From the IMG/VR virus record IMGVR_UViG_3300033997_000243, positions 248,001-312,000 of that record: a stretch of DNA of 64,000 nt; one strand, written 5' to 3'. The position numbers and the translations under genes were made by a program. Shown here piece after piece: positions 17,749-51,890 of this stretch. Every line of letters begins with the position of its first letter. Position 1 is the stretch's first letter. The notes beneath the pieces are model-generated. The model made no database searches and was not told the origin of the DNA. It worked only from the letters and a program-made list of their open reading frames with translations.

Positions 17749-17807
17749 ATTATACCAAAATAAGGTATTGAAATAAACCCCTGATTTTTGACACACTTGG
17801 ATCAGTT
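17749..17807 (-). promoter_or_regulatory. class I promoter module (AACTGATCCAAGTGTGTCAAAAA-N30-TATAAT)
   Basis: Conserved repeat, TGGTATAAT extended -10, upstream of gyrA. Confidence 0.85.
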
Positions 17808-18232
17808 CATACTAAAGATGGTGTTCCTTTAGGTAACACTTCTTTTAAGAATGAAGTGAACTGAACTTGATCATACGGATTATTTGAACTCAAATAAGAA
17901 ACATATGCTCTTACAGAGTCAAGACCTAAAGTTGAAAGAGTTTTCTTTTCACTCAATTCATTAAGCAATGTATCTGTCAGAAATTTACTATTCTTACCCA
18001 ACCAATAAAGACCTGTAGTGTAAACACGGGAAACGCTACCAATAATATTTTGTGGAGGGCGTTTTATGAAAAATCCGTTCGCATCCACAATAGCTAAGGC
18101 CATACACTGCAATCTAGTCTCCAACAACTTTTTAGGATTGTCATTAACTTCAAGTTCAGCTTTTATCCATCGACAACTTTCTTCGACTACACCTTGAGCC
18201 ATATACATGAATACAATTTGTTTTTTAATCAT
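17807..18232 (-). CDS. hypothetical protein
   Basis: 141 aa ORF, GAGG RBS. Confidence 0.75.
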   Translation of the reverse strand: MIKKQIVFMYMAQGVVEESCRWIKAELEVNDNPKKLLETRLQCMALAIVDANGFFIKRPPQNIIGSVSRVYTTGLYWLGKNSKFLTDTLLNELSEKKTLSTLGLDSVRAYVSYLSSNNPYDQVQFTSFLKEVLPKGTPSLV

Positions 18233-18241
18233 GCAATTTCC

Positions 18242-18631
18242 TCAACAAATATTATGCAAACTATTTTGCGTAACTGGAAGCAAAGCAATACGTCTGCGAT
18301 AAGACTCTCTCGATCCATAATACTGAATCATACGCTTTCGCGCCAGACTTATTTTTAAAAGCTCGTCCCAATTCCAATCATCACCATCAAGAGAAGTTCT
18401 CTCAAACACATTCAATATAACTGAAGATATTGTTTTAGATTTTGTAGGCCAAACACTTTTTACGATTGTACCATCATTACTAAGTACAATCAGAGCGGCC
18501 CGTTTAATCTTTGTGTTGATAAATGAAAGTCGAACCCAAAACACAGTCAAACTATTATTTCGCATGTGATCGGGATTCATCTTTATTGGAATAAAGCTTA
18601 AGTCCATTAGAGCATAGTAGCGTTGTCCCAT
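18242..18631 (-). CDS. hypothetical protein
   Basis: 129 aa ORF, GAGG RBS. Confidence 0.75.
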   Translation of the reverse strand: MGQRYYALMDLSFIPIKMNPDHMRNNSLTVFWVRLSFINTKIKRAALIVLSNDGTIVKSVWPTKSKTISSVILNVFERTSLDGDDWNWDELLKISLARKRMIQYYGSRESYRRRIALLPVTQNSLHNIC

Positions 18632-18643
18632 TTCACGATCCTC

Positions 18644-20626
18644 TTAATCGTTGGAACTTAACCCCAACAATTGCCGTCTGGCAGAGGCATCTTCACCGAC
18701 AACTGATCTGTAAAACGCAAGATCTTCTTGAACTTTACCGTATTCAATTTGAATCAACTTTCTGTTGTTAATATCAAATGCTATGGCTTCAAGTAAATCT
18801 GCATCTGTCTCTCCCCAACCTTTTGCACGGAACACACTTCCCTTCGGAGCATTTTTTGGTAACTTAGCTAAACATTCTTCCATTGTGTTTCCGCTGTAAT
18901 GCACACCATTAACGAGTGCGTTATACAATTGAGCGTCAACAACAAACAAACGACCTTCTTTAATAAAGTCCGGCATAAGTTTATAGAAAAATGCGGTGAT
19001 AAGTACGTTAATGTGAGATCCATCAGCATCAGCATCAGCAAGCAACATTGCAACAGCAACTCGCAGATTCTTTGTACTGAATGTAGGATTATCAGCTTTA
19101 ACATCCAAACTTTTTATGTCAACTCCCAAACTGTTCAGCATATCTTGAATGCGGTCATTTGAAAGTAAGGCACTTAGACTGACGTTCAATGCGTTTGGAA
19201 TTTTACCGCCAAGTTTTAAAACTTCCTGATTAAAACCACGAGCATTTTTGGCAGTACCACCAGCCGAATCGCCTTCGACAAAATACAGCTCACGCTCATG
19301 CGGTTTACAATCTGGAGCTTCATAAAGTTTTATTGGCAGCTTACTTCCACCTTTTTTAACTTCGCTCATGCCTTTCATTGTTTTAGCAAGATCTTCACGG
19401 GAAGCCGCAACATCACTTGCGCGTTTTATAATCTGCTTGGCTAATGTTTTGTTCTTTGCAAAAAAATCGGTTAATGGTTGAGTCAGTAAATCACAAACTT
19501 CGTTATCGATTTTAGATACCAGTTTATCTTTTACCTGACCACTAAATTGAGCGCTGTTCATTTTCCAGTTGATAATAGCAACTGCGCCAACATAAAGATC
19601 TTCTGGCTTAAACTTACCTGCTTTTTTGGGCAGATAGTTTTTCAAAGCTTTTGACATGGCCGCACGGAAACCATTTACATGCGTACCATGATCTATTGTT
19701 GGACTACTATTTACATAACTTCTGAACAGATCACTGTCATAGTGATTAGACCATTGAATAGCAACTTTCAGGCTTGAGCCATCGAACTCGAATGGCTTAC
19801 CCAAAGGCTCTAAATCATGATCAGAAATTATTGAACTGACTACAGCACCCAAACCTTTATCATTGTAGAAAACCTGTTCTTTGTTTGTTTCAAGGTTTAG
19901 GAAACCAATATAAAGCTTGCTATTCATGGTACTCATGAACTTTAAATAATCAGCAAACTTTTGTTCTTCCAAAACAGCTTGGGTATATGTTTTAAGTTTT
20001 GAGGTACGACTAGCATCAACGCTTATCACGCTTTGATCTGGAACCAAGCGAATGATAGTGCCAAGTCGCTTAAACTTTTTCTTGAGAGGTAAAAGATAAC
20101 CAAACTTTTTCTTGAGGAAAGTGTCTGGAACCTTTTTAACCGGACTGGTTTCTTTTCCGCATGAAAAACTTTGGTAGTACCACTGATCTTCACGACAAGT
20201 CCAGACCTCAAGTTCTTTTGATAAAGCATTGACCGCAGAAATACCAACACCGTGCGTACCACCTGAAGTCTGATAAGCTTTTACATCAAATTTTCCGCCA
20301 GCATGAAGTTCAGTAAGAATTACTGTTAATGCGCTTACTTTTTTACCTTCAACTGTTTTCATTCCAACAGGAATACCTTGAGCGCAGTCGGCAAAAACGT
20401 ATTCACTTGTTTTGTTATTAAAGGCTACATAGATTGCGTTGTTGCGTCCAGCTTCGTATTCATCGCGGCTGTTTTCAACAGCTTCTTTGCCCATGCGATA
20501 CATCATTGAATCGCCAAGCTCACCCATGTACATACCAGCGTTTAATCTAACACCAGCTAAACCTTTGTGAACCTGAATACTATCTTCATCATAAGTATTT
20601 GCAGATTTTGCTTTTGCTTTAGCCAT
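18644..20626 (-). CDS. gyrB: type IIA topoisomerase subunit B (GyrB/ParE-like)
   Basis: EAVENSRDE, LHAGGKF, GGTHGVGISAVNALS, VEGDSAGG, DADADGSHI, KGWGE. Confidence 0.95.
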   Translation of the reverse strand: MAKAKAKSANTYDEDSIQVHKGLAGVRLNAGMYMGELGDSMMYRMGKEAVENSRDEYEAGRNNAIYVAFNNKTSEYVFADCAQGIPVGMKTVEGKKVSALTVILTELHAGGKFDVKAYQTSGGTHGVGISAVNALSKELEVWTCREDQWYYQSFSCGKETSPVKKVPDTFLKKKFGYLLPLKKKFKRLGTIIRLVPDQSVISVDASRTSKLKTYTQAVLEEQKFADYLKFMSTMNSKLYIGFLNLETNKEQVFYNDKGLGAVVSSIISDHDLEPLGKPFEFDGSSLKVAIQWSNHYDSDLFRSYVNSSPTIDHGTHVNGFRAAMSKALKNYLPKKAGKFKPEDLYVGAVAIINWKMNSAQFSGQVKDKLVSKIDNEVCDLLTQPLTDFFAKNKTLAKQIIKRASDVAASREDLAKTMKGMSEVKKGGSKLPIKLYEAPDCKPHERELYFVEGDSAGGTAKNARGFNQEVLKLGGKIPNALNVSLSALLSNDRIQDMLNSLGVDIKSLDVKADNPTFSTKNLRVAVAMLLADADADGSHINVLITAFFYKLMPDFIKEGRLFVVDAQLYNALVNGVHYSGNTMEECLAKLPKNAPKGSVFRAKGWGETDADLLEAIAFDINNRKLIQIEYGKVQEDLAFYRSVVGEDASARRQLLGLSSND

Positions 20627-20638
20627 TGGGATCTTTCC

Positions 20639-21016
20639 TTAAGGCGTATTGTTATTTGTATTGAAATAACGAGACTCCAACACTTGAATTATTTTTGAAG
20701 TCAGATCTGGATCAGCATCTGGTAATCTTCCAGAAGAAATAAGGTTAAGAACTTTTACATAAGCATTAACCAATTTCAGATCAGAAGAATCTAACTTGAC
20801 TGGTATCTGAGAAAAATTTTCGTCAAGAACGGTGGCGACAATTTCAATAGGCGCTGTGATTGAGTTACCTGTAGCTGTTATCAGGAAAGTATAACCATCC
20901 AAAATAAAAGCTCGGAAAACATCTTGACGGAAAACATCAACCTTAGCCTCAAACTTTTCAAACCACGAAGTTCCTTGATTCTGCAAAGAAGTCAAGCGCT
21001 TTTTAATGCTCGGCAT
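20639..21016 (-). CDS. hypothetical protein
   Basis: 125 aa ORF. Confidence 0.75.
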   Translation of the reverse strand: MPSIKKRLTSLQNQGTSWFEKFEAKVDVFRQDVFRAFILDGYTFLITATGNSITAPIEIVATVLDENFSQIPVKLDSSDLKLVNAYVKVLNLISSGRLPDADPDLTSKIIQVLESRYFNTNNNTP

Positions 21017-21431
21017 TTAAAGTTATCCCCAAACATTTTCGGAAATATTCGTTAATTCCATCAATCTGAATAGATAAAATCTTTTCTTCGCTGAGATTAT
21101 AATGTTTCCCTAGCAAGGAAAGATTTGCATTAACAGCATCAAGAACCATAGAGGTTTCTATCAGACTAACTTTTAGAATTTCCAAAGAGGCTTTGGCACA
21201 AGATACTGAACCTTCCCAAATTGCAATATCTTCTGGATCTAGATTGTCCTTGTTTTTAGTAAGGATTCTATTTCCTTTTGCAACTAAGTTTGTTTGTTCA
21301 GTTTTTTGTTGCTCTAGTTCAAGTAAGTTGAGGCGAAGCGAAGTGCGGTAAGAAACCATGTAAGCATAAAGCTCAACAGGATCTTTTATGTGAAGCAGAT
21401 TATTGGTTACATGAGCCAAACTCGTGTTCAT
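21003..21431 (-). CDS. coiled-coil hypothetical protein
   Basis: 142 aa ORF. Confidence 0.75.
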   Translation of the reverse strand: MNTSLAHVTNNLLHIKDPVELYAYMVSYRTSLRLNLLELEQQKTEQTNLVAKGNRILTKNKDNLDPEDIAIWEGSVSCAKASLEILKVSLIETSMVLDAVNANLSLLGKHYNLSEEKILSIQIDGINEYFRKCLGITLNAEH

Positions 21432-21463
21432 TTCTCAATTCCATTCGCTAGAGAACTTTTACG

Positions 21464-21488
21464 AAAAAAGCCGCAAGAAGCGGCTTTT
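21464..21488 (-). terminator. intrinsic terminator
   Basis: AAAAGCCGC/GCGGCTTTT stem with U-tract. Confidence 0.8.
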
Positions 21489-21510
21489 GTTTGTTAACGA
21501 CTAAAATTTA

Positions 21511-21978
21511 TTATTCAAAATCGAAGTCGTTATTTTTCTTTTTTGTAGAAGGCTTTTTGTCAGCTTTCTTGTCTGACTTGGCCGGAGCTTTTTTGTCAGC
21601 AGACTTTTTATCAGCTGGCTTTTTGTCAACTTTCTTGTCTGACTTGGCCGGAGCTTTTTTGTCAGCAGACTTTTTATCAGCTTTCTTATCCGCTTTGGCC
21701 GGAGCTTTTTTGTCAGCTTTTTTGTCAGCTTTCTTATCCGCTTTGGCCGGAGCTTTCTTATCGGCTACCGGAGCTTTTTTGTCAGCTTTGGCAGGAGCTT
21801 TTGCGGCAGGAGCTGGATTACCTGCTAAAGCTTCGGCTTGCTGTTTTGTAGCGGCAGCAACTGCTTCTGCTTGTTCAGCGGCTTTAACTAAAGCTTCTGC
21901 TTGTTTGCGTAAAGCAGCGGCTTGCTTTGTAGAAGCAGTTGCACTTTTGTTCAGTGCGGAAATAGCTTGTTTACTCAT
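21511..21978 (-). CDS. histone H1/AlgP-like Lys-Ala-Pro repeat protein
   Basis: Ala-rich helix, then tandem PAKADKK/KSADKK repeats, ends NNDFDFE. Confidence 0.8.
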   Translation of the reverse strand: MSKQAISALNKSATASTKQAAALRKQAEALVKAAEQAEAVAAATKQQAEALAGNPAPAAKAPAKADKKAPVADKKAPAKADKKADKKADKKAPAKADKKADKKSADKKAPAKSDKKVDKKPADKKSADKKAPAKSDKKADKKPSTKKKNNDFDFE

Positions 21979-22009
21979 TTTTCAATTTCTCTTATTGCGA
22001 ATTAAAGGA

Positions 22010-22033
22010 AAGCGATGCAATACACATCGCTTT
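22010..22033 (-). terminator. intrinsic terminator candidate
   Basis: AAGCGATG/CATCGCTT stem. Confidence 0.55.
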
Positions 22034-22066
22034 AAATTTTAAAGAAGGTTAGTTAGAGGTCAGGGA

Positions 22067-22783: not shown

Positions 22784-22845
22784 GATATTTTCCCAATGTT
22801 CTACTGTTATAAAAAATTGTTTATACCATTTAGGTATACTAAAGA

Positions 22846-22853
22846 ATTTACAG
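22846..22853 (-). promoter_or_regulatory. class II candidate promoter motif CTGTAAAT
   Basis: Intergenic, upstream of start 22783. Confidence 0.5.
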
Positions 22854-22895
22854 TATTCCCAAAGCAGACTAAACTAAGGGAATACTTGAAAAGAA

Positions 22896-23417: not shown

Positions 23418-23514
23418 AGCTATAAATTTCCTTTGCGATTTTAGTCAAAAGCGACAGTTATTACATTATCATCGGCAGGTCAGAATTCTAAAATTCCTCC
23501 CGACCTGCCTATGT

Positions 23515-23522
23515 ATTTACAG
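23515..23522 (-). promoter_or_regulatory. class II candidate promoter CTGTAAATA followed by 5' leader hairpin (23474-23509)
   Basis: AAAACTGTAAATA, then GGCAGGTC/GACCTGCC stem. Confidence 0.6.
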
Positions 23523-23540
23523 TTTTAGCAGACCAGCAGC

Positions 23541-29231: not shown

Positions 29232-29301
29232 GGTCGAGATCCTCAAATGATTGATAAACTTTTTACTTTGATTGGGCGATATTGCCCTAACCAATGTACA
29301 C

Positions 29302-29350
29302 ATTATACTAAAAGTGGCCGCTCATAACAACCACTATTTTTGACACACTT
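29302..29350 (-). promoter_or_regulatory. class I promoter module with embedded terminator hairpin
   Basis: GTGTGTCAAAAA-N29-TATAAT; TTGTTA-17-TATAAT; AGUGGUUGUU/AGCGGCCACU-UUU. Confidence 0.88.
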
Positions 29351-29413
29351 TGTTTAGTAACAAACTTTTTATCGGGAACGAAACTTCAGACAAACTTTCT
29401 CTGTTGTTTCGAT
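29311..29413 (-). ncRNA. candidate ~100 nt sRNA between tandem promoter modules
   Basis: No plausible ORF between promoter 29420 and terminator hairpin 29311-29336; internal stems GAAAC/GUUUC, CAGA/UCUG. Confidence 0.4.
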
Positions 29414-29419
29414 GGTGTA

Positions 29420-29477
29420 ATTATATCAAAAGTGGCCGCTCATAACAACCACTATTTTTGACACACCTCGATCAGTT
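29420..29477 (-). promoter_or_regulatory. class I promoter module (tandem duplicate)
   Basis: Near-identical copy of 29302-29350. Confidence 0.88.
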
Positions 29478-30572: not shown

Positions 30573-30633
30573 GATCTAGATTCCCATCATAATATGTTTA
30601 ATTGGTGGCCTTATTGCCTTAACCAATGACTGT

Positions 30634-30688
30634 ATTTTACCAAAAAGCTTAGTGTCGATCAATCACTGTTTTTGACACACTTGGATCA
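30634..30688 (-). promoter_or_regulatory. class I promoter module overlapping 3' end of upstream CDS
   Basis: GATCCAAGTGTGTCAAAAA-N29-TAAAAT; TTGATC-17-TAAAAT. Confidence 0.82.
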
Positions 30689-31323: not shown

Positions 31324-31349
31324 GTTTTCTCCTTTGTTTGAATGTGCCT

Positions 31350-31397
31350 ATTATATAAAAACAGACTATAATAGGCAACACTCATTTTTGACACACC
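31350..31397 (-). promoter_or_regulatory. class I promoter module
   Basis: GTGTGTCAAAAA-N29-TATAAT; TTGCCT-17-TATAAT. Confidence 0.85.
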
Positions 31398-31406
31398 TAG
31401 AAAAGT

Positions 31407-33116
31407 TTAGGTCAACAGTGCATCGATAAGATTTTTAACGCGCTGTTCTTTGCTATCAACACTATTGATAGAAGTTACTTCAATTTCAGGATGAAGCATT
31501 GAACAAACTGACAGTGCCACCGGAAAAGTCTTTGTGGAATAATCCGCGAATTCAATATCCATATCGTCAGTCGCAAGTAAGGCGGCTTCAAGTTGAGCTA
31601 ACCATGAATCACCGACAACAATAACTCCAGTATCGGACAGACGTTTTTCAACTTTACATAAAGCTTCGTAAACGTCTGGTACGCACGAAGATAAAGCGTT
31701 CACTGTAATAACATCATTCAAAACAGCGCGAACAATTTTAGCGCGTTTCTCGATAGATGTTTCGGATAAACAGCGATTGTCAACCAGCTTGCGAACTTTT
31801 AAAGCTTCAAAAAGTTGGTCAATAACTTCAGGAACATAGCGAAGTAAATTAGTGCAGCCGCTATCTTCAAACTGATCTTCTGTTGTGTAATAAGTTCGGA
31901 TCAGGTCAACAGCATACAATGCACCATCTTCTGTGAATCGTGTTTCTGGATTCACATCAATAAAGCCGAGCAAGCTTAAAACAATACACGCTTTACCGCG
32001 CTTAGACCAAGCTGTTGTAGTTTTACCATCGTTGATCGCAACATAAATGTTTAGGATTGCGCCCAAAACTTCGTTTGTTACATAAGCTGTATCAAGCAAG
32101 AAAGCTTCAACTGTTGGAGCATCAAGCGACGATTCAAACGGCAGACTTAAATGTTTTATGATTCGTAAGGCAGCACAAAAACTTTCAAACGAAGTACAAT
32201 CAAACTGACTACTAACTTTAATAACGCGCGTCTGGCCTTCAGCCAAAGCGGTCAAGTGTGAAAGAACAGGGGCCAAATAGTTGGCACAAAATTCCTGATC
32301 CCAAACTAAACTTGTATCGTCTGTTGTAAGGCCAACAAAAGCTTCATAAATGAAAGCGCTGACATCACCGCTTTCTCTTAAAGATTCTGTTAACTGTTGG
32401 ATAAACTCAGCGTTTTGAATATTCGCGTAAACTTTGTAACTATCCAAAGAAAACAAATGCGCGTAGCCTGAGTTTTCAACAGCGGCATCAAAAGCATCTT
32501 TATTCAATTGAGTAGCATCAGTTTCGAGTAAAGCTGAAGTTGTTGGAATCAAATCAAACTCAACTTCTTCAGGTTCTACATTGGACTCGCTGTTTTCGAC
32601 AACGGGTTCAGGCGCAACAACTTTTGCGCCTTCGTCTGTTGGAACAAACTCTAAAGATGAAGCCTGTGGCTTTTCAAATCCTGTTGCAAATTCTTCAGGA
32701 TCTTTTACCAAAGCCGCAATATCAACTTCATCGGCTGGTACGGTCAAAGTTGGTAAGAACAAAGAACTACCATAAATTGTTTGAACCATACCCGCAATAA
32801 AAAAGATTGGACGAGTTTTTCCGGATTTTTTGTCATGCGTAACCGCAGAATAAACCGGATAGATAGAGTCACCATAACCAACTTCCATTTCGGTTAGCTG
32901 AATTGTATTTGAGCAATCAGCATCAATCGGATTTTTAGGAACCAAAAGTACAGCGCCAGAAAGTTGTTCAATCAGACTGTAATCATCGGTTTCAATTTTG
33001 TAAGTTGGCAAAGCATCATCTTTTGGGATGATAGCGGCCATAGCTTTGTTTGTTTGAGATTGAAAAAGTTCACCAACAGCAATAAGGTGAGTAATACGAA
33101 CTGTGATACTTTGCAT
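31407..33116 (-). CDS. large acidic hypothetical protein
   Basis: 569 aa ORF, GAGG RBS. Confidence 0.85.
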   Translation of the reverse strand: MQSITVRITHLIAVGELFQSQTNKAMAAIIPKDDALPTYKIETDDYSLIEQLSGAVLLVPKNPIDADCSNTIQLTEMEVGYGDSIYPVYSAVTHDKKSGKTRPIFFIAGMVQTIYGSSLFLPTLTVPADEVDIAALVKDPEEFATGFEKPQASSLEFVPTDEGAKVVAPEPVVENSESNVEPEEVEFDLIPTTSALLETDATQLNKDAFDAAVENSGYAHLFSLDSYKVYANIQNAEFIQQLTESLRESGDVSAFIYEAFVGLTTDDTSLVWDQEFCANYLAPVLSHLTALAEGQTRVIKVSSQFDCTSFESFCAALRIIKHLSLPFESSLDAPTVEAFLLDTAYVTNEVLGAILNIYVAINDGKTTTAWSKRGKACIVLSLLGFIDVNPETRFTEDGALYAVDLIRTYYTTEDQFEDSGCTNLLRYVPEVIDQLFEALKVRKLVDNRCLSETSIEKRAKIVRAVLNDVITVNALSSCVPDVYEALCKVEKRLSDTGVIVVGDSWLAQLEAALLATDDMDIEFADYSTKTFPVALSVCSMLHPEIEVTSINSVDSKEQRVKNLIDALLT

Positions 33117-35879: not shown

Positions 35880-36450
35880 TACACTTTACCTTAAGATTTA
35901 CAGTTACTAAATCCAGTTTGACCGCCAAAACAATTAGACCTAAACGGCCAAACATTTCATTCATCAAATTCATCAATGTCGGCCAAGCATCAAAATCGCT
36001 GGCAGTTCTGCGAAAGTTGATCTCAAACTTTTCACGAGTAAAAGAAGGATCATCTTGCTCGTTTCTAGCCAAAAGCAAAAGAGTGTAAAATTCATCCAAA
36101 GCTTTTTCTCTGTGTTGCAGCCACGTTGTAGATTTTTCATCACTCAACATCAAGCTTTCCGCAAAGTCCAAAGACATAAAGCGATGCAGCGCGTTAAAAC
36201 GACGACACATAGATCGGCTGAGCATTTCTTCCGACTGACACATTTTATTTTTTGTCCACAAAGTAATACGAGTAGATTTAAGTTCGGCAGCCACTGTATC
36301 GATGTGTTTCGCTTTGGTCGCAAACTTTTTATCCAGTTTTGAATAAAAGGGCAAACAAGCTACGACAATTCGGAAAAGCAATTCAATAAAAAGAGCTATT
36401 AATAATCCGACTGTGTAGCGCAAAATAAAGTTGATTACATTCTTAACCAT
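35866..36450 (-). CDS. membrane-anchored hypothetical protein
   Basis: N-terminal hydrophobic segment, GAGG RBS. Confidence 0.75.
   Translation of the reverse strand: MVKNVINFILRYTVGLLIALFIELLFRIVVACLPFYSKLDKKFATKAKHIDTVAAELKSTRITLWTKNKMCQSEEMLSRSMCRRFNALHRFMSLDFAESLMLSDEKSTTWLQHREKALDEFYTLLLLARNEQDDPSFTREKFEINFRRTASDFDAWPTLMNLMNEMFGRLGLIVLAVKLDLVTVNLKVKCNDKE
35896..35903 (-). promoter_or_regulatory. class II candidate promoter motif CTGTAAAT
   Basis: 17 nt upstream of start 35879. Confidence 0.4.
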
Positions 36451-37949: not shown

Positions 37950-38003
37950 TTATTGATCCTCAAATGTCATTATCGGAGGCACTATTGCCTTACCAATGAA
38001 GCT

Positions 38004-38054
38004 ATTATACCAAAAGCGGCCATTCATAACAACCGCTGTTTTTGACACACTTGG
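38004..38054 (-). promoter_or_regulatory. class I promoter module with embedded terminator hairpin
   Basis: TTGTTA-17-TATAAT; AGCGGUUGUU/AAUGGCCGCU-UUU, compensatory change relative to the 29302 copy. Confidence 0.88.
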
Positions 38055-38055
38055 T

Positions 38056-38526
38056 TTAGTTCAGATTACGAAGAGAAGTTTCTAAGTTGTTCGATGATTC
38101 TAAGAATCGGCACAGTTTCTTTATACAACTTTTTGTATTGCCCTTTAAGTAAAAGCGTTGCGTGTAAACAGTATCAAATTTAGAATCGATCTTGCATTCT
38201 AAATAAAGACCAGTATCTGAATCACAGCATAGCCAGAAAGTTCCATAACAGTCAACAAAGGCAAAAGGAAAGCTTAAAGCAATTTTTCCAGAATCACGTT
38301 CTCCCATCATTTCTTTATTCGTTGTATCATGTTTGAATGGACGTAAAATACCAAGATTCTTCTTAGTCCTTTTATTTGTAGAACGACCTATCAGATTAAC
38401 GGCCAATGTTTTTTGTTGTCCTGTTATAAATCCTTTGTCAACTGCCTTAGATAATTGAGAGTCAACACTGCGAACTACCGATTGAACTTCTGCTGTTATT
38501 TGAATTCTATTGCCAGCTTTTTTCAT
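38056..38526 (-). CDS. hypothetical protein
   Basis: 156 aa ORF. Confidence 0.75.
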   Translation of the reverse strand: MKKAGNRIQITAEVQSVVRSVDSQLSKAVDKGFITGQQKTLAVNLIGRSTNKRTKKNLGILRPFKHDTTNKEMMGERDSGKIALSFPFAFVDCYGTFWLCCDSDTGLYLECKIDSKFDTVYTQRFYLKGNTKSCIKKLCRFLESSNNLETSLRNLN

Positions 38527-42502: not shown

Positions 42503-42569
42503 TTACTTCTTCTCCTAACAAACTTTTGTGCTTGTGAAAGTACAGCACTTCCCTTGTTTGTATGATGCC

Positions 42570-42627
42570 ATTATACCAAAAATGACCAAGTGCGTCTATG
42601 TCGATTTTTGACGCACTTGGATCAGTT
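42570..42627 (-). promoter_or_regulatory. class I promoter module
   Basis: AACTGATCCAAGTGCGTCAAAAA-N29-TATAAT; TAGACG-17-TATAAT. Confidence 0.85.
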
Positions 42628-45928: not shown

Positions 45929-45931
45929 AAA

Positions 45932-46522
45932 CTACTCCGCAGGTTCTGGCTGATTCTCTTCTGAACAGACAATAGATTTAGATCTGGTTCCAGCAAGAAA
46001 TTTAGAGTCAACTAAGTCACATTGCTGCATTAACAAACCAAGTGCATAAAATATCCTTGAGTGCAAAACAAACTGATGCCAAAGCATTTGGTCGTTAAAA
46101 GATTGCAACCCAATAGTTGAAACGTCCACAACGTAAGTTTGATTTACGTCTTTGTTTATAAGTTTCATTATCTGATTTACAGTAGTCTTATCGAAAGGAC
46201 TTTCGCTTTGAACCATGTAGTGCATAATCAATACGAAAATCATGGGAAGCCAACGCATGGTGCGATCTTGATAAGACATTTTATGACCTTGTTTATCAGT
46301 GGCAACCATACCTGCTATATGTTTTTCTATAAACAAATTGTTTTGCAAGAATCTGTCTATGCGTGAATACACGACTATCAAATCCTGTTCTTCAGATTTA
46401 TTGACAAGATCGTCGTTCAGACTTAACCTTAAACTGTTCATGTGTATAATGAAGTTGAGTTTGAAGCTTAAGTTGTTAAAGAACACAAGAATTTTAAACT
46501 TTAAGTTATGATAAAATTTCAT
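45932..46522 (-). CDS. hypothetical protein
   Basis: 196 aa ORF. Confidence 0.75.
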   Translation of the reverse strand: MKFYHNLKFKILVFFNNLSFKLNFIIHMNSLRLSLNDDLVNKSEEQDLIVVYSRIDRFLQNNLFIEKHIAGMVATDKQGHKMSYQDRTMRWLPMIFVLIMHYMVQSESPFDKTTVNQIMKLINKDVNQTYVVDVSTIGLQSFNDQMLWHQFVLHSRIFYALGLLMQQCDLVDSKFLAGTRSKSIVCSEENQPEPAE

Positions 46523-46532
46523 TGTACTTTCC

Positions 46533-47213
46533 TTATACCCAAGAACGCATGTTTAATTGCATTCTTTTCAATGCTTGTTTATGAAGATTACTTATGCGAG
46601 GCACACAAAGTTCCATACGATTTCCAATCTCTTCCATGTTAAGATCGCGCATATAGTAAAGATTAACTACAATGGATTCCTGCTTTGGCAGTTTTGATAC
46701 GAATACTTTTAAAGCAGATCCTAACTTTGTGACCTCGCACTGACGATCCACAAAATCCACTTCAGTGCAGAAACCGTCAAAGTTGCTTTCATTGAGTTCA
46801 CTGTCAAGTAACACATGAATGCTGTGTGTTTCACGTTCGAGTTTATTAAACTCTTCGATAGAAATATTCAGCTCACGAGCAATTTCAATATTTGTTGGAA
46901 CGCGCAAAAACTTCTGCTCTAATGCAGAACGCACTTCATTTAGTTTACGAGCTTCTGCACAAACATTTTTAGGAATCCAACCTAGTTTTCTGGCCTCGTC
47001 TAACATTGAACCGTAAACTCGAATTCCAGCAAAAGTTTGAAAAGAAGTGCCAGAGTTTGAATCATAACGATCAATCGACTCCAGTATTCCAAGCATACCA
47101 GCTTGGATTAAATCATCCAGCTGTATACTCGCGGAAAGTTTGCCAATTAAACTGTTGGCAATGCGTTTAACCATAACCATATTATCCGCAATAATTTTTT
47201 GTTTGCTATTCAT
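46533..47213 (-). CDS. fliA: FliA/sigma28-family sigma factor
   Basis: VKRIANSL..KLSASIQLDDLIQAGMLGILES..RYD...G..F.TFAGIRVYGSMLDEARKLGWIP; region 4 LYY..DLNMEEIG..M.L...RIS.LHKQAL. Confidence 0.9.
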   Translation of the reverse strand: MNSKQKIIADNMVMVKRIANSLIGKLSASIQLDDLIQAGMLGILESIDRYDSNSGTSFQTFAGIRVYGSMLDEARKLGWIPKNVCAEARKLNEVRSALEQKFLRVPTNIEIARELNISIEEFNKLERETHSIHVLLDSELNESNFDGFCTEVDFVDRQCEVTKLGSALKVFVSKLPKQESIVVNLYYMRDLNMEEIGNRMELCVPRISNLHKQALKRMQLNMRSWV

Positions 47214-47961
47214 TATTGCCTCCTATTGCGACAATCTGATTTAAGTAAAGAGTTTTGTAAGACATATAACCGCCTTCTTTAAACTCAATGTTGATCAAAT
47301 GAAGATCTCGTGTCGGCACACCTTCCTGTTTAATCAGTGCAAAGTTTACCGGATTGAAATTTACAACCGTAGCATATTTCAACTTACCACGATCAAGATA
47401 TGTTATGCGTGATCCTTTTTGAATGCTAAAAAGATTAAGACCAAAACGCATATCATAGTTAAAGTTTTTCAGAGTGTGTGCAGAATAAGATTTGCCTTCA
47501 AACTCTAAAACTTCATTCAGATGATCTATGTAATTTTCTAAATCATCTTTTAATACATCAAGTGCCGCTCTTGGCGATACTGATATACTTGGGTCTGGAC
47601 TGTAATTACTACAGTTCAACAAACATTTTATTTTGTAGATGCGTTCTTCGTCAATAGTCGGAAACGAACCATCCCAAATAAGTTCAACGTGTAAGTGACA
47701 AGAGTTATTAATAATGATAACCTTGTTTTCTTCAACGAACATTTTTCGTGAAGTCACGTTGAACAACTGATAAACTTTTTCAACACTAATCTTTATAGTG
47801 CCACGAACTATTAAAGTTGCTAAACTGTCAGGTTCATAAAGACACTCACCAAGATAACTGCCTGAGATACTAATCCGCGCTTGTTGATCATACATGATCT
47901 TTATTAAGCTTGATAAATCCGCAGTAGCAGGTTTGTTTGGTATGGTATATAATTGTCGCAT
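47206..47961 (-). CDS. hypothetical protein
   Basis: 251 aa ORF overlapping fliA start. Confidence 0.8.
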   Translation of the reverse strand: MRQLYTIPNKPATADLSSLIKIMYDQQARISISGSYLGECLYEPDSLATLIVRGTIKISVEKVYQLFNVTSRKMFVEENKVIIINNSCHLHVELIWDGSFPTIDEERIYKIKCLLNCSNYSPDPSISVSPRAALDVLKDDLENYIDHLNEVLEFEGKSYSAHTLKNFNYDMRFGLNLFSIQKGSRITYLDRGKLKYATVVNFNPVNFALIKQEGVPTRDLHLINIEFKEGGYMSYKTLYLNQIVAIGGNNE

Positions 47962-47982
47962 TTGATTTTCCTTTCAAGCGGT

Positions 47983-48002
47983 AGGGGAACTTCTGTTCCC
48001 CT
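47983..48002 (-). terminator. hairpin / terminator candidate
   Basis: AGGGGAAC/GTTCCCCT stem. Confidence 0.5.
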
Positions 48003-48012
48003 CAGTTTAGTT

Positions 48013-48801
48013 TTAAGAACGCACGTAATTCAAAGCTGACGCCAACGCATCTTCAATAGATGCAATAATCAAAACTTTATCAACTTTTTTCTGACGTTTT
48101 ACCGCAGTCGGCCCAAAGTTGTCTATAAGAATTTGACTGATCGGATGAAAAGCGGTTGTAGAATTTTTAATATTCAGCTGGTCATTAGTTACGTAAATAG
48201 ATGCAGGCATTCCTACATTTTTATTTTTGGTAAAAAAGTCAACAATTTGAGCAGCCGATGAAAACTCTTCGATTTTGTTTTCATCTAAAAACACAAACTT
48301 TGCTTTCATCGCGGATAGTGCAGATACCTTAAACTTTTCCAGTTCGATACTAACAAGATTGGATATATCATCAAAGTTAATATCCAGATCCAGCTGGTCA
48401 AGACCTTCACAAAGTTCATTGGCAATTTCTGGCAAGTCCAGATCGTCAAGCGCATCGTGCGCTAAAATATCAGCGGCCATGCCTTTTAATATCCAGTCTG
48501 CAAAAATTGTGGAATTCATTTCCATCTTACGAAGATTAGCAACGACTACTTTTAAAGCAGAATATACTTCGTCAGTATTTCCATCAACATAAGAAATTTC
48601 GTTTTGCGCGGAAAGCAGTGTGATCCGGTAAACATAATTTTCAGGTTCACAATCAGATACGTCTTTGGTAATGTTCTCTATGTTCATTACCACATCGTAA
48701 ACATCACCAAGAGTAAGGCGTTTCACCAGCGATAAAACTTGCAGAGGTGAGTTTGAACCGCCTTTCTGTGGTTTGTTAGATTCTAATTTGAATAAATTCA
48801 T
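48013..48801 (-). CDS. hypothetical protein
   Basis: 262 aa, GGAG RBS. Confidence 0.8.
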   Translation of the reverse strand: MNLFKLESNKPQKGGSNSPLQVLSLVKRLTLGDVYDVVMNIENITKDVSDCEPENYVYRITLLSAQNEISYVDGNTDEVYSALKVVVANLRKMEMNSTIFADWILKGMAADILAHDALDDLDLPEIANELCEGLDQLDLDINFDDISNLVSIELEKFKVSALSAMKAKFVFLDENKIEEFSSAAQIVDFFTKNKNVGMPASIYVTNDQLNIKNSTTAFHPISQILIDNFGPTAVKRQKKVDKVLIIASIEDALASALNYVRS

Positions 48802-48812
48802 AGATTCTCCGT

Positions 48813-49502
48813 TTATTTATCAGAAGCTAAACTGCTTATTAAATTTGACTTGATGAAAAGTTTTTTGCCTTCACACAAAACTTGTATGTCGAGGGCAAAA
48901 GGTTGTTTACGTCCATCACGAGTTTTAGCAACATCTTTCAAATCTGTGTAAGAAAGAACGTCAACATTGACCAGATCGTTACTGAGGAAAACACCAACTT
49001 TTTTGTTGACCAATTGGTGAATGCTAAGGCCGATAGGTAAACCGTGATTGATTCGCATATCGATATTTTTTGCGAAACAAACTTTTGTATGAGCCTGTGT
49101 CACATGAAACTTCAGGTACTGAGAAAAAGCGTGAGCTTCCATCGTTTGATCGAAAACATCATAACTTGCTTCAGGCGCAAGACCGATAGTAATATCCATC
49201 AAAGTAAATTCAGTAATTCGACCTGTTGCTGTATTTTGAACGACTGCTTTTATAAAATCGTTCTCATAACGATCCATGAAAAACTTACTTGCAACAGTCG
49301 GTAAAGTTGGTTCAGCTCGTTCTTGCCTGTGACATTGTTTTGCACACAGTCTGAGAATTTCACGAGCCTCGTTTGACTGAGCAAAAAGTTTGCCGAAAAT
49401 GTACACGCGATTTCCCTGCAAAGAAACTTCAGGCATAGCCTTAGTTGATTGCATCAGCAAATGAAGCACTTGAAAAACTACTTCCGTGGTAAGTTTACGC
49501 AT
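48813..49502 (-). CDS. hypothetical protein
   Basis: Start moved to ATG 49502 (MRKLT), GGAG RBS. Confidence 0.8.
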   Translation of the reverse strand: MRKLTTEVVFQVLHLLMQSTKAMPEVSLQGNRVYIFGKLFAQSNEAREILRLCAKQCHRQERAEPTLPTVASKFFMDRYENDFIKAVVQNTATGRITEFTLMDITIGLAPEASYDVFDQTMEAHAFSQYLKFHVTQAHTKVCFAKNIDMRINHGLPIGLSIHQLVNKKVGVFLSNDLVNVDVLSYTDLKDVAKTRDGRKQPFALDIQVLCEGKKLFIKSNLISSLASDK

Positions 49503-49515
49503 AAACTTTTCTCCC

Positions 49516-49543
49516 AAAAAGTTGGTGGCCCGAAAGCCACCGA
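49516..49543 (-). terminator. intrinsic terminator
   Basis: GGTGGC-TTTCGG-GCCACC then U-tract on minus strand. Confidence 0.7.
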
Positions 49544-49549
49544 ATGATT

Positions 49550-49957
49550 TTACTGAGCCAGAGCTACCAACTTTTCTTTGATCGAATCAAAGTCCAGTGT
49601 GTTTATTTGGCTCTGGAATTCGTCTTTGATTCGGTTAGCACCTTTGGCACTTAGCGCATCTGAAACCGCAGCGTAGATGTCAGCTTCTGGATCATTAACA
49701 TCAAAATGTTTATCGTCAGTCAGATAGTTCATAACCGTACTTTCCTGCAAGCCGTTGTTACGAATATCGTAGCAAACAACTTTTTTAACATTTTCTTCCG
49801 TGGTATGACAAATTTCATCGTCAGAATCCGCCATGCAAGTGATCATGGTTTTTGTTGGATTCGATGAAAAACGAAAAGACAGTATAGTGAAAGTGCCTTT
49901 ACGATCTTTCAGTGTAACGCGCATTAAACTTTTCAAATTGATTCGTGCTTGTGACAT
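49550..49957 (-). CDS. hypothetical protein
   Basis: 135 aa, first gene after class I promoter. Confidence 0.8.
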   Translation of the reverse strand: MSQARINLKSLMRVTLKDRKGTFTILSFRFSSNPTKTMITCMADSDDEICHTTEENVKKVVCYDIRNNGLQESTVMNYLTDDKHFDVNDPEADIYAAVSDALSAKGANRIKDEFQSQINTLDFDSIKEKLVALAQ

Positions 49958-50017
49958 AACTAGATTCTCTTATGCTTGGCAAGATTTGACATGGTTCTTG
50001 CCCTAACCATTGAATAC

Positions 50018-50068
50018 ATTATACCAAAAAAGGGCAGCCGAAGCCACCCCTATTTTTGACACACTTGG
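50018..50068 (-). promoter_or_regulatory. class I promoter module containing a canonical UUCG terminator
   Basis: GTGTGTCAAAAA-TA-GGGGTGGC-TTCG-GCTGCCC-TTTTTT-GG-TATAAT (29 nt spacer). Confidence 0.88.
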
Positions 50069-50069
50069 T

Positions 50070-50690
50070 TTAGTTGCTATTCGCGCTTAAATCGCAGATT
50101 GAATCGGCCATTTCTTTTCCAACCATCGAAACGTACATGGCGTGTTTCATCTTGTCGAATTCGGCTAAAAAGTTTGCATCCAGTTTAGTCTTATCCGAAT
50201 CTATTTCAACAGCCAACTCTGGCAATGATGTCCACAGCTGATAACTATTCAAGATCAAACTCTGGCCATTTTCATCAGCAGGTGCAATCGCATTTACTTC
50301 ATTCCCTTGAATGTAAATCAATCCGTGATAGCCAGCAAAGTTGGTGCGAACAATGTAACGTCCTTCGCTAGTTTTAAAATCGCGCGGGTAAATAGAAAAA
50401 ATAACTCCATCTTCACCGACAAAATAGCAGGTCTTTGGTAATAAACGATCTGCCGTACTTACAGTTGGTTTCTTTCCAGTAGAGATTTTTTCAGCTGTTA
50501 AATCGATTGGATCGTAACCCAAAATCTCAATTCGTTTTTCACGGGAATCTTCTGAATCAGCATACTTGCCTTCAAAAGCTTGCCACAACTTTTCAGCATC
50601 GGCCAGAGAACGTAAGCCCATTGATAAAAATGAACTTTGTAATGCTAACCAACGAGAAACTTCAACCATTTTGTTTGTTACGTCTTTCAT
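50070..50690 (-). CDS. hypothetical protein
   Basis: 206 aa ORF. Confidence 0.8.
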   Translation of the reverse strand: MKDVTNKMVEVSRWLALQSSFLSMGLRSLADAEKLWQAFEGKYADSEDSREKRIEILGYDPIDLTAEKISTGKKPTVSTADRLLPKTCYFVGEDGVIFSIYPRDFKTSEGRYIVRTNFAGYHGLIYIQGNEVNAIAPADENGQSLILNSYQLWTSLPELAVEIDSDKTKLDANFLAEFDKMKHAMYVSMVGKEMADSICDLSANSN

Positions 50691-50691
50691 G

Positions 50692-51087
50692 TTATTTCAC
50701 CTTTTTCAGAAAACCAATTGATAATACATAACGTGTACCGGACTCAATGTAAGAAACAGAGTGTCCAATTAAATCAGGTCGAAAATAAACTAACGGGCCG
50801 AAGTGTGTAACCTTGTTTTTATGACCAAACTTATTGAATTGATCATAACGGAATTCACCGCCAACTTTTGCTGGAAACAACACAATGTTGATTCTATGAT
50901 GTTCGTAATCCTTACCAACACGATCAAAGTGATATGGAATGCTGCTTCCGGCTTCGTAGCGCAGAATATGAAGATCCAGATTAAAGCGTTTGCTGATTAA
51001 GATCTCGAACTTTTTATATCCGGTTCCTTGTCTACCGTCTTTCCACCGAAAGTAATTTCTCAGGGTATCAACAAACTTTTTAATCAT
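50692..51087 (-). CDS. 2OG-Fe(II) oxygenase
   Basis: LRY..GSSIPYHFD (HxD), GGEF, FRPD..GHSV...GTRYVLS. Confidence 0.88.
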   Translation of the reverse strand: MIKKFVDTLRNYFRWKDGRQGTGYKKFEILISKRFNLDLHILRYEAGSSIPYHFDRVGKDYEHHRINIVLFPAKVGGEFRYDQFNKFGHKNKVTHFGPLVYFRPDLIGHSVSYIESGTRYVLSIGFLKKVK

Positions 51088-51455
51088 ACGTCACCAAACA
51101 CAAGTTGTTTATTACGGCCACCATCAAGATCGTGAAATACCCAACCATCGTTATACTCAAGGATTAAGGCAATTTCACAATCTCGATAGATTTCTTCAAT
51201 GTCATCTACCCAAGACCAAGGCATAAATTTTTCATCATGTCCATGATAGAATTGCCATCCGTTTTCGTCATCAAAATAAATGTACGAATATTTTTCAAAA
51301 ATTGCATCATTGTAAAATCTGATGCGTGTTGATATAGGTTGATTCATCGTTCTGGCTAAGAAAGATTGTATCTGTTCAACTGTAATCGGATATTCAACAG
51401 GATCAACTATCAACTCACCTTCAACAACTGGCGCTACTTTAATTAAATCATTCAT
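51084..51455 (-). CDS. hypothetical protein
   Basis: 123 aa ORF. Confidence 0.75.
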   Translation of the reverse strand: MNDLIKVAPVVEGELIVDPVEYPITVEQIQSFLARTMNQPISTRIRFYNDAIFEKYSYIYFDDENGWQFYHGHDEKFMPWSWVDDIEEIYRDCEIALILEYNDGWVFHDLDGGRNKQLVFGDV

Positions 51456-51465
51456 AAACTTTTCC

Positions 51466-51792
51466 TTATTTCTTAACTGTTACATTGTAAAGTTCATCTT
51501 CAGTTATTTCTACTGAAAAGCACAATTTTTCAAAAGAGCCTTTTGCGGTTCTGCGAGCATGGTTATCTAAAAGAACGAGTACGAAAGATTGTGGACAAAA
51601 AGCATCCAGATTTTCAATATAACTTTTATTTAACTCATGAATAGATATGACCTGATAGAATGATTCGGAATCCAGTAGAGGATCTTTTCCCAATAAAGCT
51701 TCATCTAATTTAATAAAGTCCAGCAGTTTAACTTCTGCCAAACCTACTCCGCAGCTTCTAACAAACTTTTTATTTGATACCGATACTTTCAT
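51466..51792 (-). CDS. hypothetical protein
   Basis: Start moved to ATG 51792 (MKVSV), GAGG RBS. Confidence 0.75.
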   Translation of the reverse strand: MKVSVSNKKFVRSCGVGLAEVKLLDFIKLDEALLGKDPLLDSESFYQVISIHELNKSYIENLDAFCPQSFVLVLLDNHARRTAKGSFEKLCFSVEITEDELYNVTVKK

Positions 51793-51832
51793 TTTTAATA
51801 CCTCGTAGATTCTTCGCTGTTTCAATGTGCCT

Positions 51833-51890
51833 ATTATAGCAAAAATCTAGGATCATGTATATAGCTATTTTTGACACACTTGGATCAGTT
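51833..51890 (-). promoter_or_regulatory. class I promoter module
   Basis: AACTGATCCAAGTGTGTCAAAAA-N29-TATAAT; TATACA-17-TATAAT; TGC extended -10. Confidence 0.85.

What the first reader, a model, noticed from the sequence alone, without database searches (positions are those of the whole stretch)
17749..51890. Nine-copy promoter module with a fixed upstream box and a terminator built into the spacer
Seen: minus-strand (AACTGATCCAA)GTGTGTCAAAAA-N29/30-TA(T/A)AAT at 17749, 29302, 29420, 30634, 31350, 38004, 42570, 50018 and 51833. The -35 position is variable (TTGTTA, TTGATC, TTGCCT, TAGACG, TATACA, TGGCTT), while the box at about -42 to -64 is nearly invariant. In several copies the spacer is an RNA hairpin plus U-tract. 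One is a UUCG terminator (50018); two others show a compensatory change AGUGG/CCACU to AGCGG/CCGCU (29302 vs 38004), with G-U pairs valid only on the transcribed strand. Inference: a stop-and-restart cassette that ends upstream transcription and re-initiates under control of a sequence-specific activator or alpha-CTD-binding site.
Basis: partly seen in the sequence, partly recalled or inferred. Interest (0 to 1): 0.7.

Follow-up and report, generated by a model that had tools for sequence, protein, structure and literature searches.

The report
Jumbo-phage early promoter cassette with upstream box
A 65-bp module repeated 13 times in an uncultured 320-kb phage is most likely its standard early promoter, read by the host RNA polymerase. 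It carries a strictly conserved upstream box of unknown reader, and in about half the copies it also holds the terminator of the gene before it.

Summary
The window holds nine minus-strand copies, and the whole 319.5-kb phage genome holds 13. Each reads AACTGATCnAR-GTGTGTCAAAAA, then 29 nt (30 in one copy), then TA(T/A)AAT. All lie between genes and point the same way as the genes.

- **Promoter type:** this is a complete sigma-70-type promoter, with an invariant T at -35 in a weak TTGAC/TTTAC/TATAC-like hexamer. It also has a T-tract, an extended -10 (TGnTATAAT) and a CA start. It is the only such promoter class in the genome.
- **Terminators:** only 4 of 9 window copies (6 of 13 genome-wide) have a credible hairpin plus U-tract in the spacer. 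A diverged relative has 1-2 of 12, and Phage NCTB has 0 of 8. The terminator is therefore optional. Where present, it matches the "promoter-coupled terminators" recently described in bacteria.
- **The box:** it is kept letter for letter in a relative whose shared genes are only about 66-69% identical in DNA. Phage NCTB and Erwinia phage Y3 have different, lineage-specific boxes at the same position. This points to base-specific recognition, probably by a phage-encoded factor plus an alpha-CTD A-tract contact. That step is inferred.
- **Context:** modules sit at junctions of variable small genes, like PeSL cassettes of T4-type phages.

No transcript ends could be mapped.

The parts
17742..17807 (-). 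Module copy: left arm and box 17785-17807, 30-nt spacer, TATAAT 17749-17754, predicted +1 near 17742. It lies upstream of the topoisomerase II subunit gene (16065-17708). No spacer hairpin.
   Evidence: The orthologous copy in G001 also has the 30-nt spacing.
29295..29359 (-). Module copy, downstream member of a tandem pair. Box 29337-29348, terminator-like hairpin 29313-29335 followed by UUUU, TATAAT 29302-29307. Type-A leader.
   Evidence: (dG -11.3, z -3.6)
29413..29477 (-). Module copy, upstream member of the tandem pair, 118 nt from the next copy with no ORF between them. Box 29455-29466, hairpin 29431-29453, TATAAT 29420-29425.
   Evidence: One repeat unit is missing in a wastewater strain (run X2, contig 8).
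30627..30691 (-). Module copy. Box 30669-30680, -35 TTGATC, -10 TAAAAT 30634-30639, no hairpin, type-A leader. The upstream ORF ends inside the spacer.
31343..31407 (-). Module copy. Box 31385-31396, -35 TTGCCT, TATAAT 31350-31355, no hairpin. It lies upstream of an 84-aa ORF.
   Evidence: Orthologous junction in G001.
37997..38061 (-). Module copy. Box 38039-38050, hairpin 38015-38037 (the AGCGG/CCGCU variant) followed by UUUU, TATAAT 38004-38009. Type-A leader.
   Evidence: (dG -10.4, z -3.3)
42563..42627 (-). Module copy with a one-mismatch box (GTGCGTCAAAAA, 42605-42616). -35 TAGACG, TATAAT 42570-42575, no convincing hairpin.
   Evidence: Orthologous junction in G001.
50011..50075 (-). Module copy. 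Box 50053-50064, 9-bp UUCG-tetraloop hairpin 50030-50051 followed by U6, TATAAT 50018-50023. It heads the gene run that includes the 226-aa sigma factor gene.
   Evidence: (dG -13.3, z -3.4)
51826..51890 (-). Module copy. Box 51868-51879, -35 TATACA, TATAAT 51833-51838, no hairpin. About 25 further upstream bases are shared with two copies outside the window.
46533..47213 (-). Phage sigma factor, 226 aa, with regions 2, 3 and 4. It lies downstream of the 50064 module. It is absent from relatives that still carry the module, so it is not the module's reader.
61331..62350 (-). Phage sigma factor, 339 aa (only region 2 detected; phrog_17569). It is conserved in G001 (70%) and NCTB (43%). It is preceded by the other promoter-like motif, ACTGTAAAT.

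Best explanation
The module is the sigma-70-type, probably early, promoter class of an uncultured jumbo phage of the Lu11/PaBG/Y3-related group. This phage has no RNA polymerase of its own.

Host core enzyme with the host primary sigma recognises four elements: TATAAT, the TG of the extended -10, the T-tract at -18 to -15, and a weak -35-like hexamer. Transcription starts at the conserved CA.

The 23-bp upstream box (-64 to -42) is a second, base-specific recognition element held at a fixed helical phase. Its A5 tract (-46 to -42) probably contacts alpha-CTD. Its lineage-specific part (AACTGATCnARGTGTGTC) is probably bound by a phage-encoded factor, either injected or made early, that boosts or later shuts off these promoters.

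Because the region between the box and the T-tract is otherwise unconstrained, about half the copies place the intrinsic terminator of the upstream gene there. In those copies the hairpin overlaps the -35 and the U-tract is the promoter's T-tract. That gives a promoter-coupled terminator that insulates each small transcription unit.

Shown here: sequence architecture, copy number, spacing, conservation and hairpin energetics.
For: - Ten of the genome's 13 TGnTATAAT sites lie in the module, and almost all intergenic sigma-70-like matches are module copies.
- No RNAP beta homologue was found in the genome.
- A logo of 25 copies from two phages shows invariant TATAAT, T-35, TTTT-G, C-1/A+1 and a 29-nt box-to-(-10) distance. 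The single 30-nt exception is preserved in the orthologous copy upstream of the topoisomerase gene.
- Every copy is intergenic or overlaps only the last codons of the upstream ORF, 45-163 nt before the next start.
- G001 shares only about 66-69% DNA identity in conserved genes. The module is the only other DNA that blastn detects between the two phages in the loci compared.
- NCTB has eight copies of a homologous module with a different box (TAACTTTTTTATCnTGGTACAAAA) at the same 29-nt distance. Erwinia phage Y3 has five TGnTATAAT sites with yet another shared box.
- The 226-aa sigma lies downstream of a module and is missing from G001 and NCTB. The -10 stays canonical although the conserved phage sigma has diverged to 43% identity.
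- Six copies have hairpins of -10 to -17 kcal/mol (z -3.3 to -6.9) directly followed by U-tracts, and these are stronger on the sense strand.
- The same architecture has been shown to function in bacteria (bioRxiv 10.64898/2026.08.19.745784).
- Downstream genes include a topoisomerase II subunit, a sigma factor and many small ORFans.
Against: - There are no transcript 5' or 3' ends. The only runs holding this phage are kept as assembled contigs, without direction or ends.
- No candidate box-binding protein was found among 20 proteins encoded near the modules.
- A promoter with a consensus extended -10 should be strong without any activator, and early promoters must fire before phage proteins are made. 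The box could therefore be purely an UP-like element or a repressor site.
- Early timing is inferred only from promoter type and gene content.
- Seven of 13 copies, and nearly all copies in relatives, lack a terminator.
Confidence: 0.6

Rival explanations
1. The box is simply an unusually long, lineage-drifted UP element. Host alpha-CTDs bind it, no phage factor is involved, and the module is a constitutively strong host-type promoter.
For: - The A5 tract at -46 to -42 sits where the proximal UP subsite lies (UP consensus from established knowledge).
- The NCTB and Y3 versions are A/T-rich, with a T-tract followed by an A-tract.
- Early promoters must work on naked injected DNA.
Against: - Positions such as C-62, G-60, C-57, G-53, G-51, G-49 and C-47 are nearly invariant, with about 1.2-2.2 bits each. 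UP elements are degenerate A/T-rich sequences.
- Each phage lineage keeps its own exact box across 5-13 copies, while the adjacent spacers are free to vary.
Confidence: 0.22
2. The module is read by the conserved phage sigma factor (339 aa) rather than by the host primary sigma. It would then be a middle-type class, not early.
For: - The 339-aa sigma is conserved in every relative that carries a module.
- Group-2 jumbo phages are thought to redirect host core polymerase with their own sigmas (PMC7824862).
Against: - The -10, TG and -35 consensus equals the universal housekeeping consensus. It stays the same in G000, G001, NCTB and Y3 while the phage sigma diverges to 43% identity.
- Only region 2 is detectable in that sigma.
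- No other sigma-70-like promoter class exists to express early genes.
- The sigma's own gene is preceded by the other motif, ACTGTAAAT.
Confidence: 0.1
3. The box is conserved mainly because the copies are homogenised by recombination. On this view it is a mobile regulatory cassette, as proposed for PeSLs, with no separate regulatory role for the box.
For: - Modules sit at junctions of variable genes.
- A two-gene block in G000 (277480-278680) that is absent from G001 is flanked by modules. An 8-kb versus 1.1-kb replacement starts at a module.
- A wastewater strain lacks exactly one unit of the tandem pair.
- Subfamilies share extra flanks and leaders.
Against: - Gene conversion would homogenise the spacers as well. 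In fact the spacers differ almost completely between copies, while the box and -10 on either side are fixed.
- Orthologous copies in G000 and G001 keep the box although their flanking genes are only about 45% identical in protein.
Confidence: 0.08

Closest known systems
PeSL cassettes (promoter-early stem-loops) of T4-type phages (Arbiol et al. 2010, PMC2839356; Comeau et al. 2014, PMC4122927)
   Same: - Many copies of a composite sigma-70-like early promoter plus stem-loop terminator.
- The copies sit between small, variable, mostly ORFan genes, all in one orientation.
- Indels between related phages are bounded by copies.
   Different: - In PeSLs the stem-loop lies just upstream of the promoter. 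Here it lies inside the promoter, over the -35, and only in about half the copies.
- PeSLs are described with an AT-rich upstream region, not an invariant 23-bp G/C-containing box.
- The phage is not T4-like. Its portal is closest to NCTB, Y3 and Lu11-type jumbo phages.
- Mini-circle formation was not tested.
Promoter-coupled terminators of bacteria (Fletcher, Grainger and colleagues, bioRxiv 10.64898/2026.08.19.745784)
   Same: - A-tract, then a stem-loop that coincides with the -35.
- A T-tract directly upstream of the -10 serves both termination and initiation.
- Pyrimidine/purine start, with the predicted 3' end about 10-15 bp upstream of +1.
   Different: - That work describes individually evolved sites in bacterial chromosomes.
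- Here the arrangement is one multi-copy phage module with a fixed extra upstream box, and many copies carry no terminator.
- Function is unmeasured here.
T4 early promoters with UP-like A-tracts and extended -10
   Same: A phage early promoter class for unmodified host polymerase, with conserved positions well upstream of the -35, an A-tract near -42, and TGn plus TATAAT.
   Different: The upstream part here holds a long, near-invariant, non-A/T sequence. The -35 is weaker.
T4 MotA-dependent middle promoters (sigma appropriation)
   Same: A phage-specific conserved box combined with a good -10 and a poor -35.
   Different: The MotA box replaces the -35 at about -30. Here the box lies at -42 to -64 and a -35-like hexamer is retained. 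MotA or AsiA homologues were not searched for.

Membership tests
Sigma-70-type bacterial promoter | -10 hexamer TATAAT with A at position 2 and T at position 6 | tested here: met
   25 of 25 copies have T-12, A-11, A-9, A-8 and T-7.
Sigma-70-type bacterial promoter | -35 hexamer related to TTGACA, 16-18 bp upstream of the -10 | tested here: inconclusive
   T-35 is invariant. The consensus is T-T/A-G/T-A-C/T at 17-bp spacing, but individual copies match only 2-4 of 6 positions.
Sigma-70-type bacterial promoter | Extended -10 (TGn) | tested here: met
   T-15 in 24 of 25 copies and G-14 in 21 of 25. Ten of the genome's 13 TGnTATAAT sites are module copies.
Sigma-70-type bacterial promoter | Transcription actually starts 6-8 nt downstream of the -10 | not testable with these tools
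   Only assembled contigs of public runs were available, and no ends were reported. A conserved C-1/A+1 sits 6-7 nt after the -10.
Intrinsic (Rho-independent) terminator | Stable G+C-rich hairpin directly followed by a U-tract on the transcribed strand | tested here: inconclusive
   Met in 4 of 9 window copies and 6 of 13 genome copies (dG -10 to -17, z -3.3 to -6.9). Not met in the rest (dG -4.3 or weaker). G001 has 1-2 of 12 and NCTB 0 of 8.
Promoter-coupled terminator | Terminator stem-loop overlaps the -35, and its T-tract abuts the -10 of a same-strand promoter (termination site 35 bp or less upstream of the start site) | tested here: met
   By sequence geometry, in the six hairpin-bearing copies. 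The stem covers about -39 to -19 and the U-tract is -18 to -15. Definition. RNA ends were not measured.
PeSL cassette | Multi-copy strong sigma-70-like promoter plus terminator stem-loop in variable regions of the phage genome | tested here: met
   13 copies lie among small ORFans. G000 and G001 differ in gene content next to modules.
PeSL cassette | Stem-loop located just upstream of the promoter | tested here: not met
   When present, the hairpin lies between the box and the -10, over the -35. PeSL layout.
PeSL cassette | Copies act as recombination points (indels, mini-circles) | tested here: inconclusive
   A 118-bp one-unit deletion occurs in run X2. A two-gene indel is flanked by modules between G000 and G001. 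Other apparent joints were explained as cross-mapping of paralogous copies.
UP element | A/T-rich sequence from -40 to -60, with an A-tract proximal subsite and an A/T distal subsite | tested here: inconclusive
   The proximal A5 tract at -46 to -42 is present in 23-25 of 25 copies. The distal part holds near-invariant G and C positions.
MotA-type middle promoter | Activator box centred near -30 that replaces the -35 | tested here: not met
   The box spans -64 to -42, and a -35-like hexamer is kept.

The most novel reading that the evidence does not exclude
The box is the DNA target of a so-far unidentified phage-encoded specificity factor, injected or made early. The factor co-evolves with the box across a whole family of jumbo phages: G000/G001, NCTB and Erwinia Y3 each have their own version at the same phase. 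It would direct host polymerase to promoters with a weak -35, a recruitment system distinct from MotA/AsiA.

In addition, one bacterium has placed a copy of the same module in front of a defence-type gene. Rheinheimera texasensis carries it upstream of an IetA-like AAA+ ATPase in a low-GC island next to a GajB-like helicase. This could be a promoter that responds to infection by such phages.
Probability: 0.15. Interest if true: 0.8.

Novelty: new variant of a known kind. Interest (0 to 1): 0.5.

Why it matters
Non-nucleus-forming jumbo phages of the Lu11/PaBG/Y3 group have no described promoter classes. The PaBG paper that was searched for the word mentions "promoter" once and describes no motif.

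This module gives a concrete, testable definition of their host-polymerase-dependent promoters. It suggests a transcription programme with three layers: the module, an ACTGTAAAT motif upstream of replication genes and a sigma gene, and two phage sigma factors. It also supplies a natural multi-copy example of promoter-coupled terminators.

The invariant, lineage-specific box is a handle for finding the unknown factor, by pull-down in a cultured relative such as Erwinia phage Y3. The modules also mark the boundaries of exchangeable gene cassettes, which helps in reading the mosaic structure of these genomes.

Tried and rejected
- **Stops in all three frames in the left arm of the module.** Only 2 of 13 G000 copies and 0 of 12 G001 copies close all three frames. 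Rejected. However, the upstream ORF often ends inside the left arm.
- **Loose ends in runs X1 and X2 as evidence of large recombinants between modules.** They match the flanks of other module copies. They are best explained by contigs from paralogous copies mapping partly onto the laid stretch. Rejected as evidence.
- **Mapping RNA ends.** The runs are small wastewater libraries held only as contigs, and no begin or end sites were reported.
It is absent from G001 and NCTB, which keep the module.
- **The box as a common host regulatory site.** A scan of one genome per bacterial species found five single hits, about the number expected by chance. Only one had the full module. There were no further copies in that genome, and none in 200 genomes of its family.
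- **Dyad symmetry in the box (dimeric regulator).** By eye only a 3-bp TGA/TCA symmetry is present. Not supported.
- **Consensus structure of the type-A leader.** RNAalifold returned no pairs, although single sequences fold into 5'-terminal hairpins.
- **DNA and protein searches of the deposited phage collection with variable-region queries** found nothing. Only the portal found relatives.
- **The generic sigma-70 scan** finds no more sites than in shuffled sequence, although module copies top the list.
- **T7-like RNAP family search.** The control did not ring, so the result is uninformative.

Full report
**What the window is.** The window is bases 248001-312000 of a 319,518-bp viral record with direct terminal repeats. 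It has about 38% G+C, and genes in the window run almost entirely on the minus strand. Annotated genes include an intein-bearing large terminase, a portal, two topoisomerase II subunits and an intein-bearing UvsX-like recombinase. The portal is 56% identical to that of Phage NCTB. It is 47-50% identical to portals of Erwinia phages Y3 and Alexandra and Dickeya phage AD1. More distant matches fall in Pseudomonas and other jumbo phages. No RNA polymerase beta homologue was found. Two sigma-70-family genes were found, both in the window. This fits the published picture of jumbo phages that lack a polymerase but carry sigma factors (PMC7824862; PMC7412058).

**The observation.** Aligning the nine copies shows invariant columns in the box, in a TTTT run and in the -10 hexamer, with unrelated sequence between them. 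Genome-wide there are 13 promoter-type copies, all on the minus strand, at 147-183 kb and 265-300 kb. There is also one box remnant without a -10, inside an ORF. All copies are intergenic or overlap only the end of the upstream ORF. They lie 45-163 nt before the next start codon on the same strand.

**Anatomy.** I pooled the 13 copies with 12 from a diverged relative (G001, 286.6 kb) and anchored them on the -10. The consensus reads:
- -64 AACTGATC-n-A-R-GTGTGTC-AAAAA -42
- y-A-g
- an invariant T at -35 within a T-T/A-G/T-A-C/T hexamer
- 17 bp of spacer ending in TTTT (-18 to -15) and G-14
- TATAAT
- five free bases, then C-1 A+1

This is a full sigma-70-type promoter with an extended -10. The -35 is weak but not absent. 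The box-to-(-10) distance is 29 nt in 23 of 25 copies. The two 30-nt exceptions are the orthologous copies upstream of the topoisomerase gene in the two phages. Ten of the 13 TGnTATAAT sites in the genome are module copies. Nearly all intergenic matches to a relaxed TTGACA-N16-18-TATAAT search are module copies too. The module is therefore the only host-type promoter class this phage has.

**The terminator claim.** I folded the segment from the A-tract to the T-tract for each copy. Six of 13 copies give strong hairpins directly followed by U-tracts. These are window copies 50064, 38050, 29466 and 29348, and genome copies 182690 and 179413 (dG -10.4 to -17.1, z -3.3 to -6.9). The other seven give nothing beyond shuffled sequence. 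The independent pattern scan picks out the same four window copies. The hairpins contain G-U pairs and are 5-7 kcal/mol weaker on the opposite strand. The U-A to C-G change between the 29348/29466 and 38050 copies is real. In G001 only one copy is strong and one is marginal, out of 12. In NCTB none of eight is strong. The terminator is thus an optional use of an otherwise free segment bounded by a fixed A-tract and a fixed T-tract. A 2026 preprint reports that this geometry is common and functional in bacteria. There the stem-loop coincides with the -35, the T-tract serves both the terminator and the -10, and termination occurs about 10 bp before the next start (10.64898/2026.08.19.745784).

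**Who reads the promoter.**
- The 226-aa sigma (regions 2-4) lies five genes downstream of the 50064 module. It has no counterpart in G001 or NCTB, which keep the module.
- The 339-aa sigma is conserved (70% in G001, 43% in NCTB). Its gene is preceded by a different motif, ACTGTAAAT. That motif also precedes the clamp loader, DNA polymerase and primase genes, and a near-match (TCTGTAAAT) precedes the portal gene.
- The module's -10, TG and -35 equal the universal housekeeping consensus. They stay the same in G000, G001, NCTB and Y3.

By elimination and by consensus, the host primary sigma is the likely reader, and the class is likely early. This is an inference.

**The box.** G000 and G001 share about 66-69% DNA identity in conserved genes and about 45% protein identity in genes flanking modules. 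The module itself is otherwise the only DNA that blastn detects between them in the loci compared. Spacers between the box and the T-tract are unrelated among copies, so blanket homogenisation does not explain the box. NCTB has eight copies of a homologous module with the box TAACTTTTTTATCnTGGTACAAAA, again 29 nt from TATAAT. Erwinia phage Y3 has five same-strand TGnTATAAT sites that share yet another upstream box ending in rAAAyAG. The A-tract at -46 to -42 is common to all three and fits the proximal UP subsite (established knowledge). The remainder is lineage-specific and, in G000/G001, contains near-invariant G and C positions. That pattern suggests base-specific protein recognition that co-evolves with the phage. 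No candidate protein emerged from family searches of 20 neighbouring gene products.

**Relation to variable genes.** Module positions are orthologous between G000 and G001 at four junctions.
- Between two of these junctions, G000 carries an extra block of two genes plus one module that G001 lacks.
- Downstream of another module, 8 kb in G000 (including the 226-aa sigma) corresponds to 1.1 kb of unrelated sequence in G001.
- The other G001 copies lie in regions with almost no G000 homologues.
- A wastewater assembly lacks exactly one 118-bp unit of the tandem pair at 29348/29466.

This resembles the PeSL cassettes of T4-type phages. The evidence for recombination at modules is suggestive only, and several apparent joints proved to be cross-mapping.

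**Other features of the module.** Similarity among copies runs from about -64 (to about -90 in three copies) to about +25. Leaders fall into two types. Type A (AUUGGUUAGGGCAA...) folds into a 5'-terminal hairpin in most copies and in relatives, but no alignment-based consensus structure was obtained.

**Verdict.** The finding is real and biologically meaningful, but it is best filed as a new variant of known kinds. Those kinds are phage early promoter/terminator cassettes and promoter-coupled terminators. The unexplained part is the invariant, lineage-specific upstream box.

Noticed in passing
L122 3267-3324 (minus strand); Rheinheimera texasensis DSM 17496, NZ_JONU01000008.1: This is the only bacterial genome, among one representative per species, with a full module copy. 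It has the box with its CTG and CAGCTA flanks, 29 nt, TGTTATAAT and a CA start, and is 33/38 identical to the left part of one phage copy. It sits in a 33% G+C island about 150 nt upstream of a 668-aa IetA-like tandem AAA+ ATPase, divergent from a GajB-like helicase. The ATPase has no homologue in the phages. There are no further copies in that genome, and none in 200 genomes of its family.
   Followed up: partly
window 62385-62393, 61329-61337, 46175-46183, 35896-35904, 1135-1143 and others (minus strand); about 34 sites genome-wide: A second promoter-like motif, A-ACTGTAAAT-C, lies 24-70 nt upstream of start codons on both strand blocks. It precedes the clamp loader, DNA polymerase, primase and 339-aa sigma genes, and a near-match (TCTGTAAAT) precedes the portal gene. 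It is probably read with a phage sigma.
   Followed up: partly
window 29308-29413 (minus strand): The tandem module pair encloses no ORF. The predicted 106-nt transcript, from the first promoter to the second module's terminator, folds at -27 kcal/mol (z -3.65), so it may be a small RNA. A tandem pair also exists at the orthologous place in G001, 170 nt apart. One unit is missing in a wastewater strain.
   Followed up: partly
window 46533-47213 and 61331-62350 (minus strand): There are two phage sigma factors. The 226-aa one (regions 2, 3 and 4) is strain-specific cargo inside a module-flanked variable block. The 339-aa one is the conserved family sigma.
   Followed up: yes
window 49967-50011, 37953-37997, 30583-30627, 29251-29295 (minus strand): The type-A transcript leader (AUUGGUUAGGGCAA...) forms a hairpin starting at +1 or +2 in most copies, including those in relatives. 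This is a possible 5' stabiliser or protein-binding site. No consensus structure was found by alignment.
   Followed up: partly
window 6314-9265 and 57946-60177 (minus strand): The large terminase and the UvsX/RecA-like recombinase both carry weak, sub-threshold matches to the intein splicing domain.
   Followed up: no
whole genome G000 (for example window 29361-29369 and 42519-42527): The 9-mer AAAAGTTTG occurs 103 times. My own composition estimate for the related 9-mer AAAAAGTTT is about 10. Most copies lie inside genes and point the same way as transcription. The cause (peptide bias or a signal) was not examined.
   Followed up: no
G000 196242-196253 (outside the window); also in L044: A box remnant (AAGATCCTAGTGTGTCAAAAAT) without a -10 lies inside a 208-aa ORF. 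It is conserved in the near-identical relative, and it resembles the degraded 'half PeSLs' described for T4-type phages.
   Followed up: no
window 54924-54995 (minus strand): A tRNA gene is the only Rfam match at gathering threshold in the window.
   Followed up: no
G000, several intergenic regions (for example upstream of genes at 69213, 72112, 77692, 206835 and 253295): A possible third upstream motif, (A)TAATTTA(A/G), lies 15-35 nt before start codons of genes that lack the other two motifs. Counts are low and it was not tested statistically.
   Followed up: no
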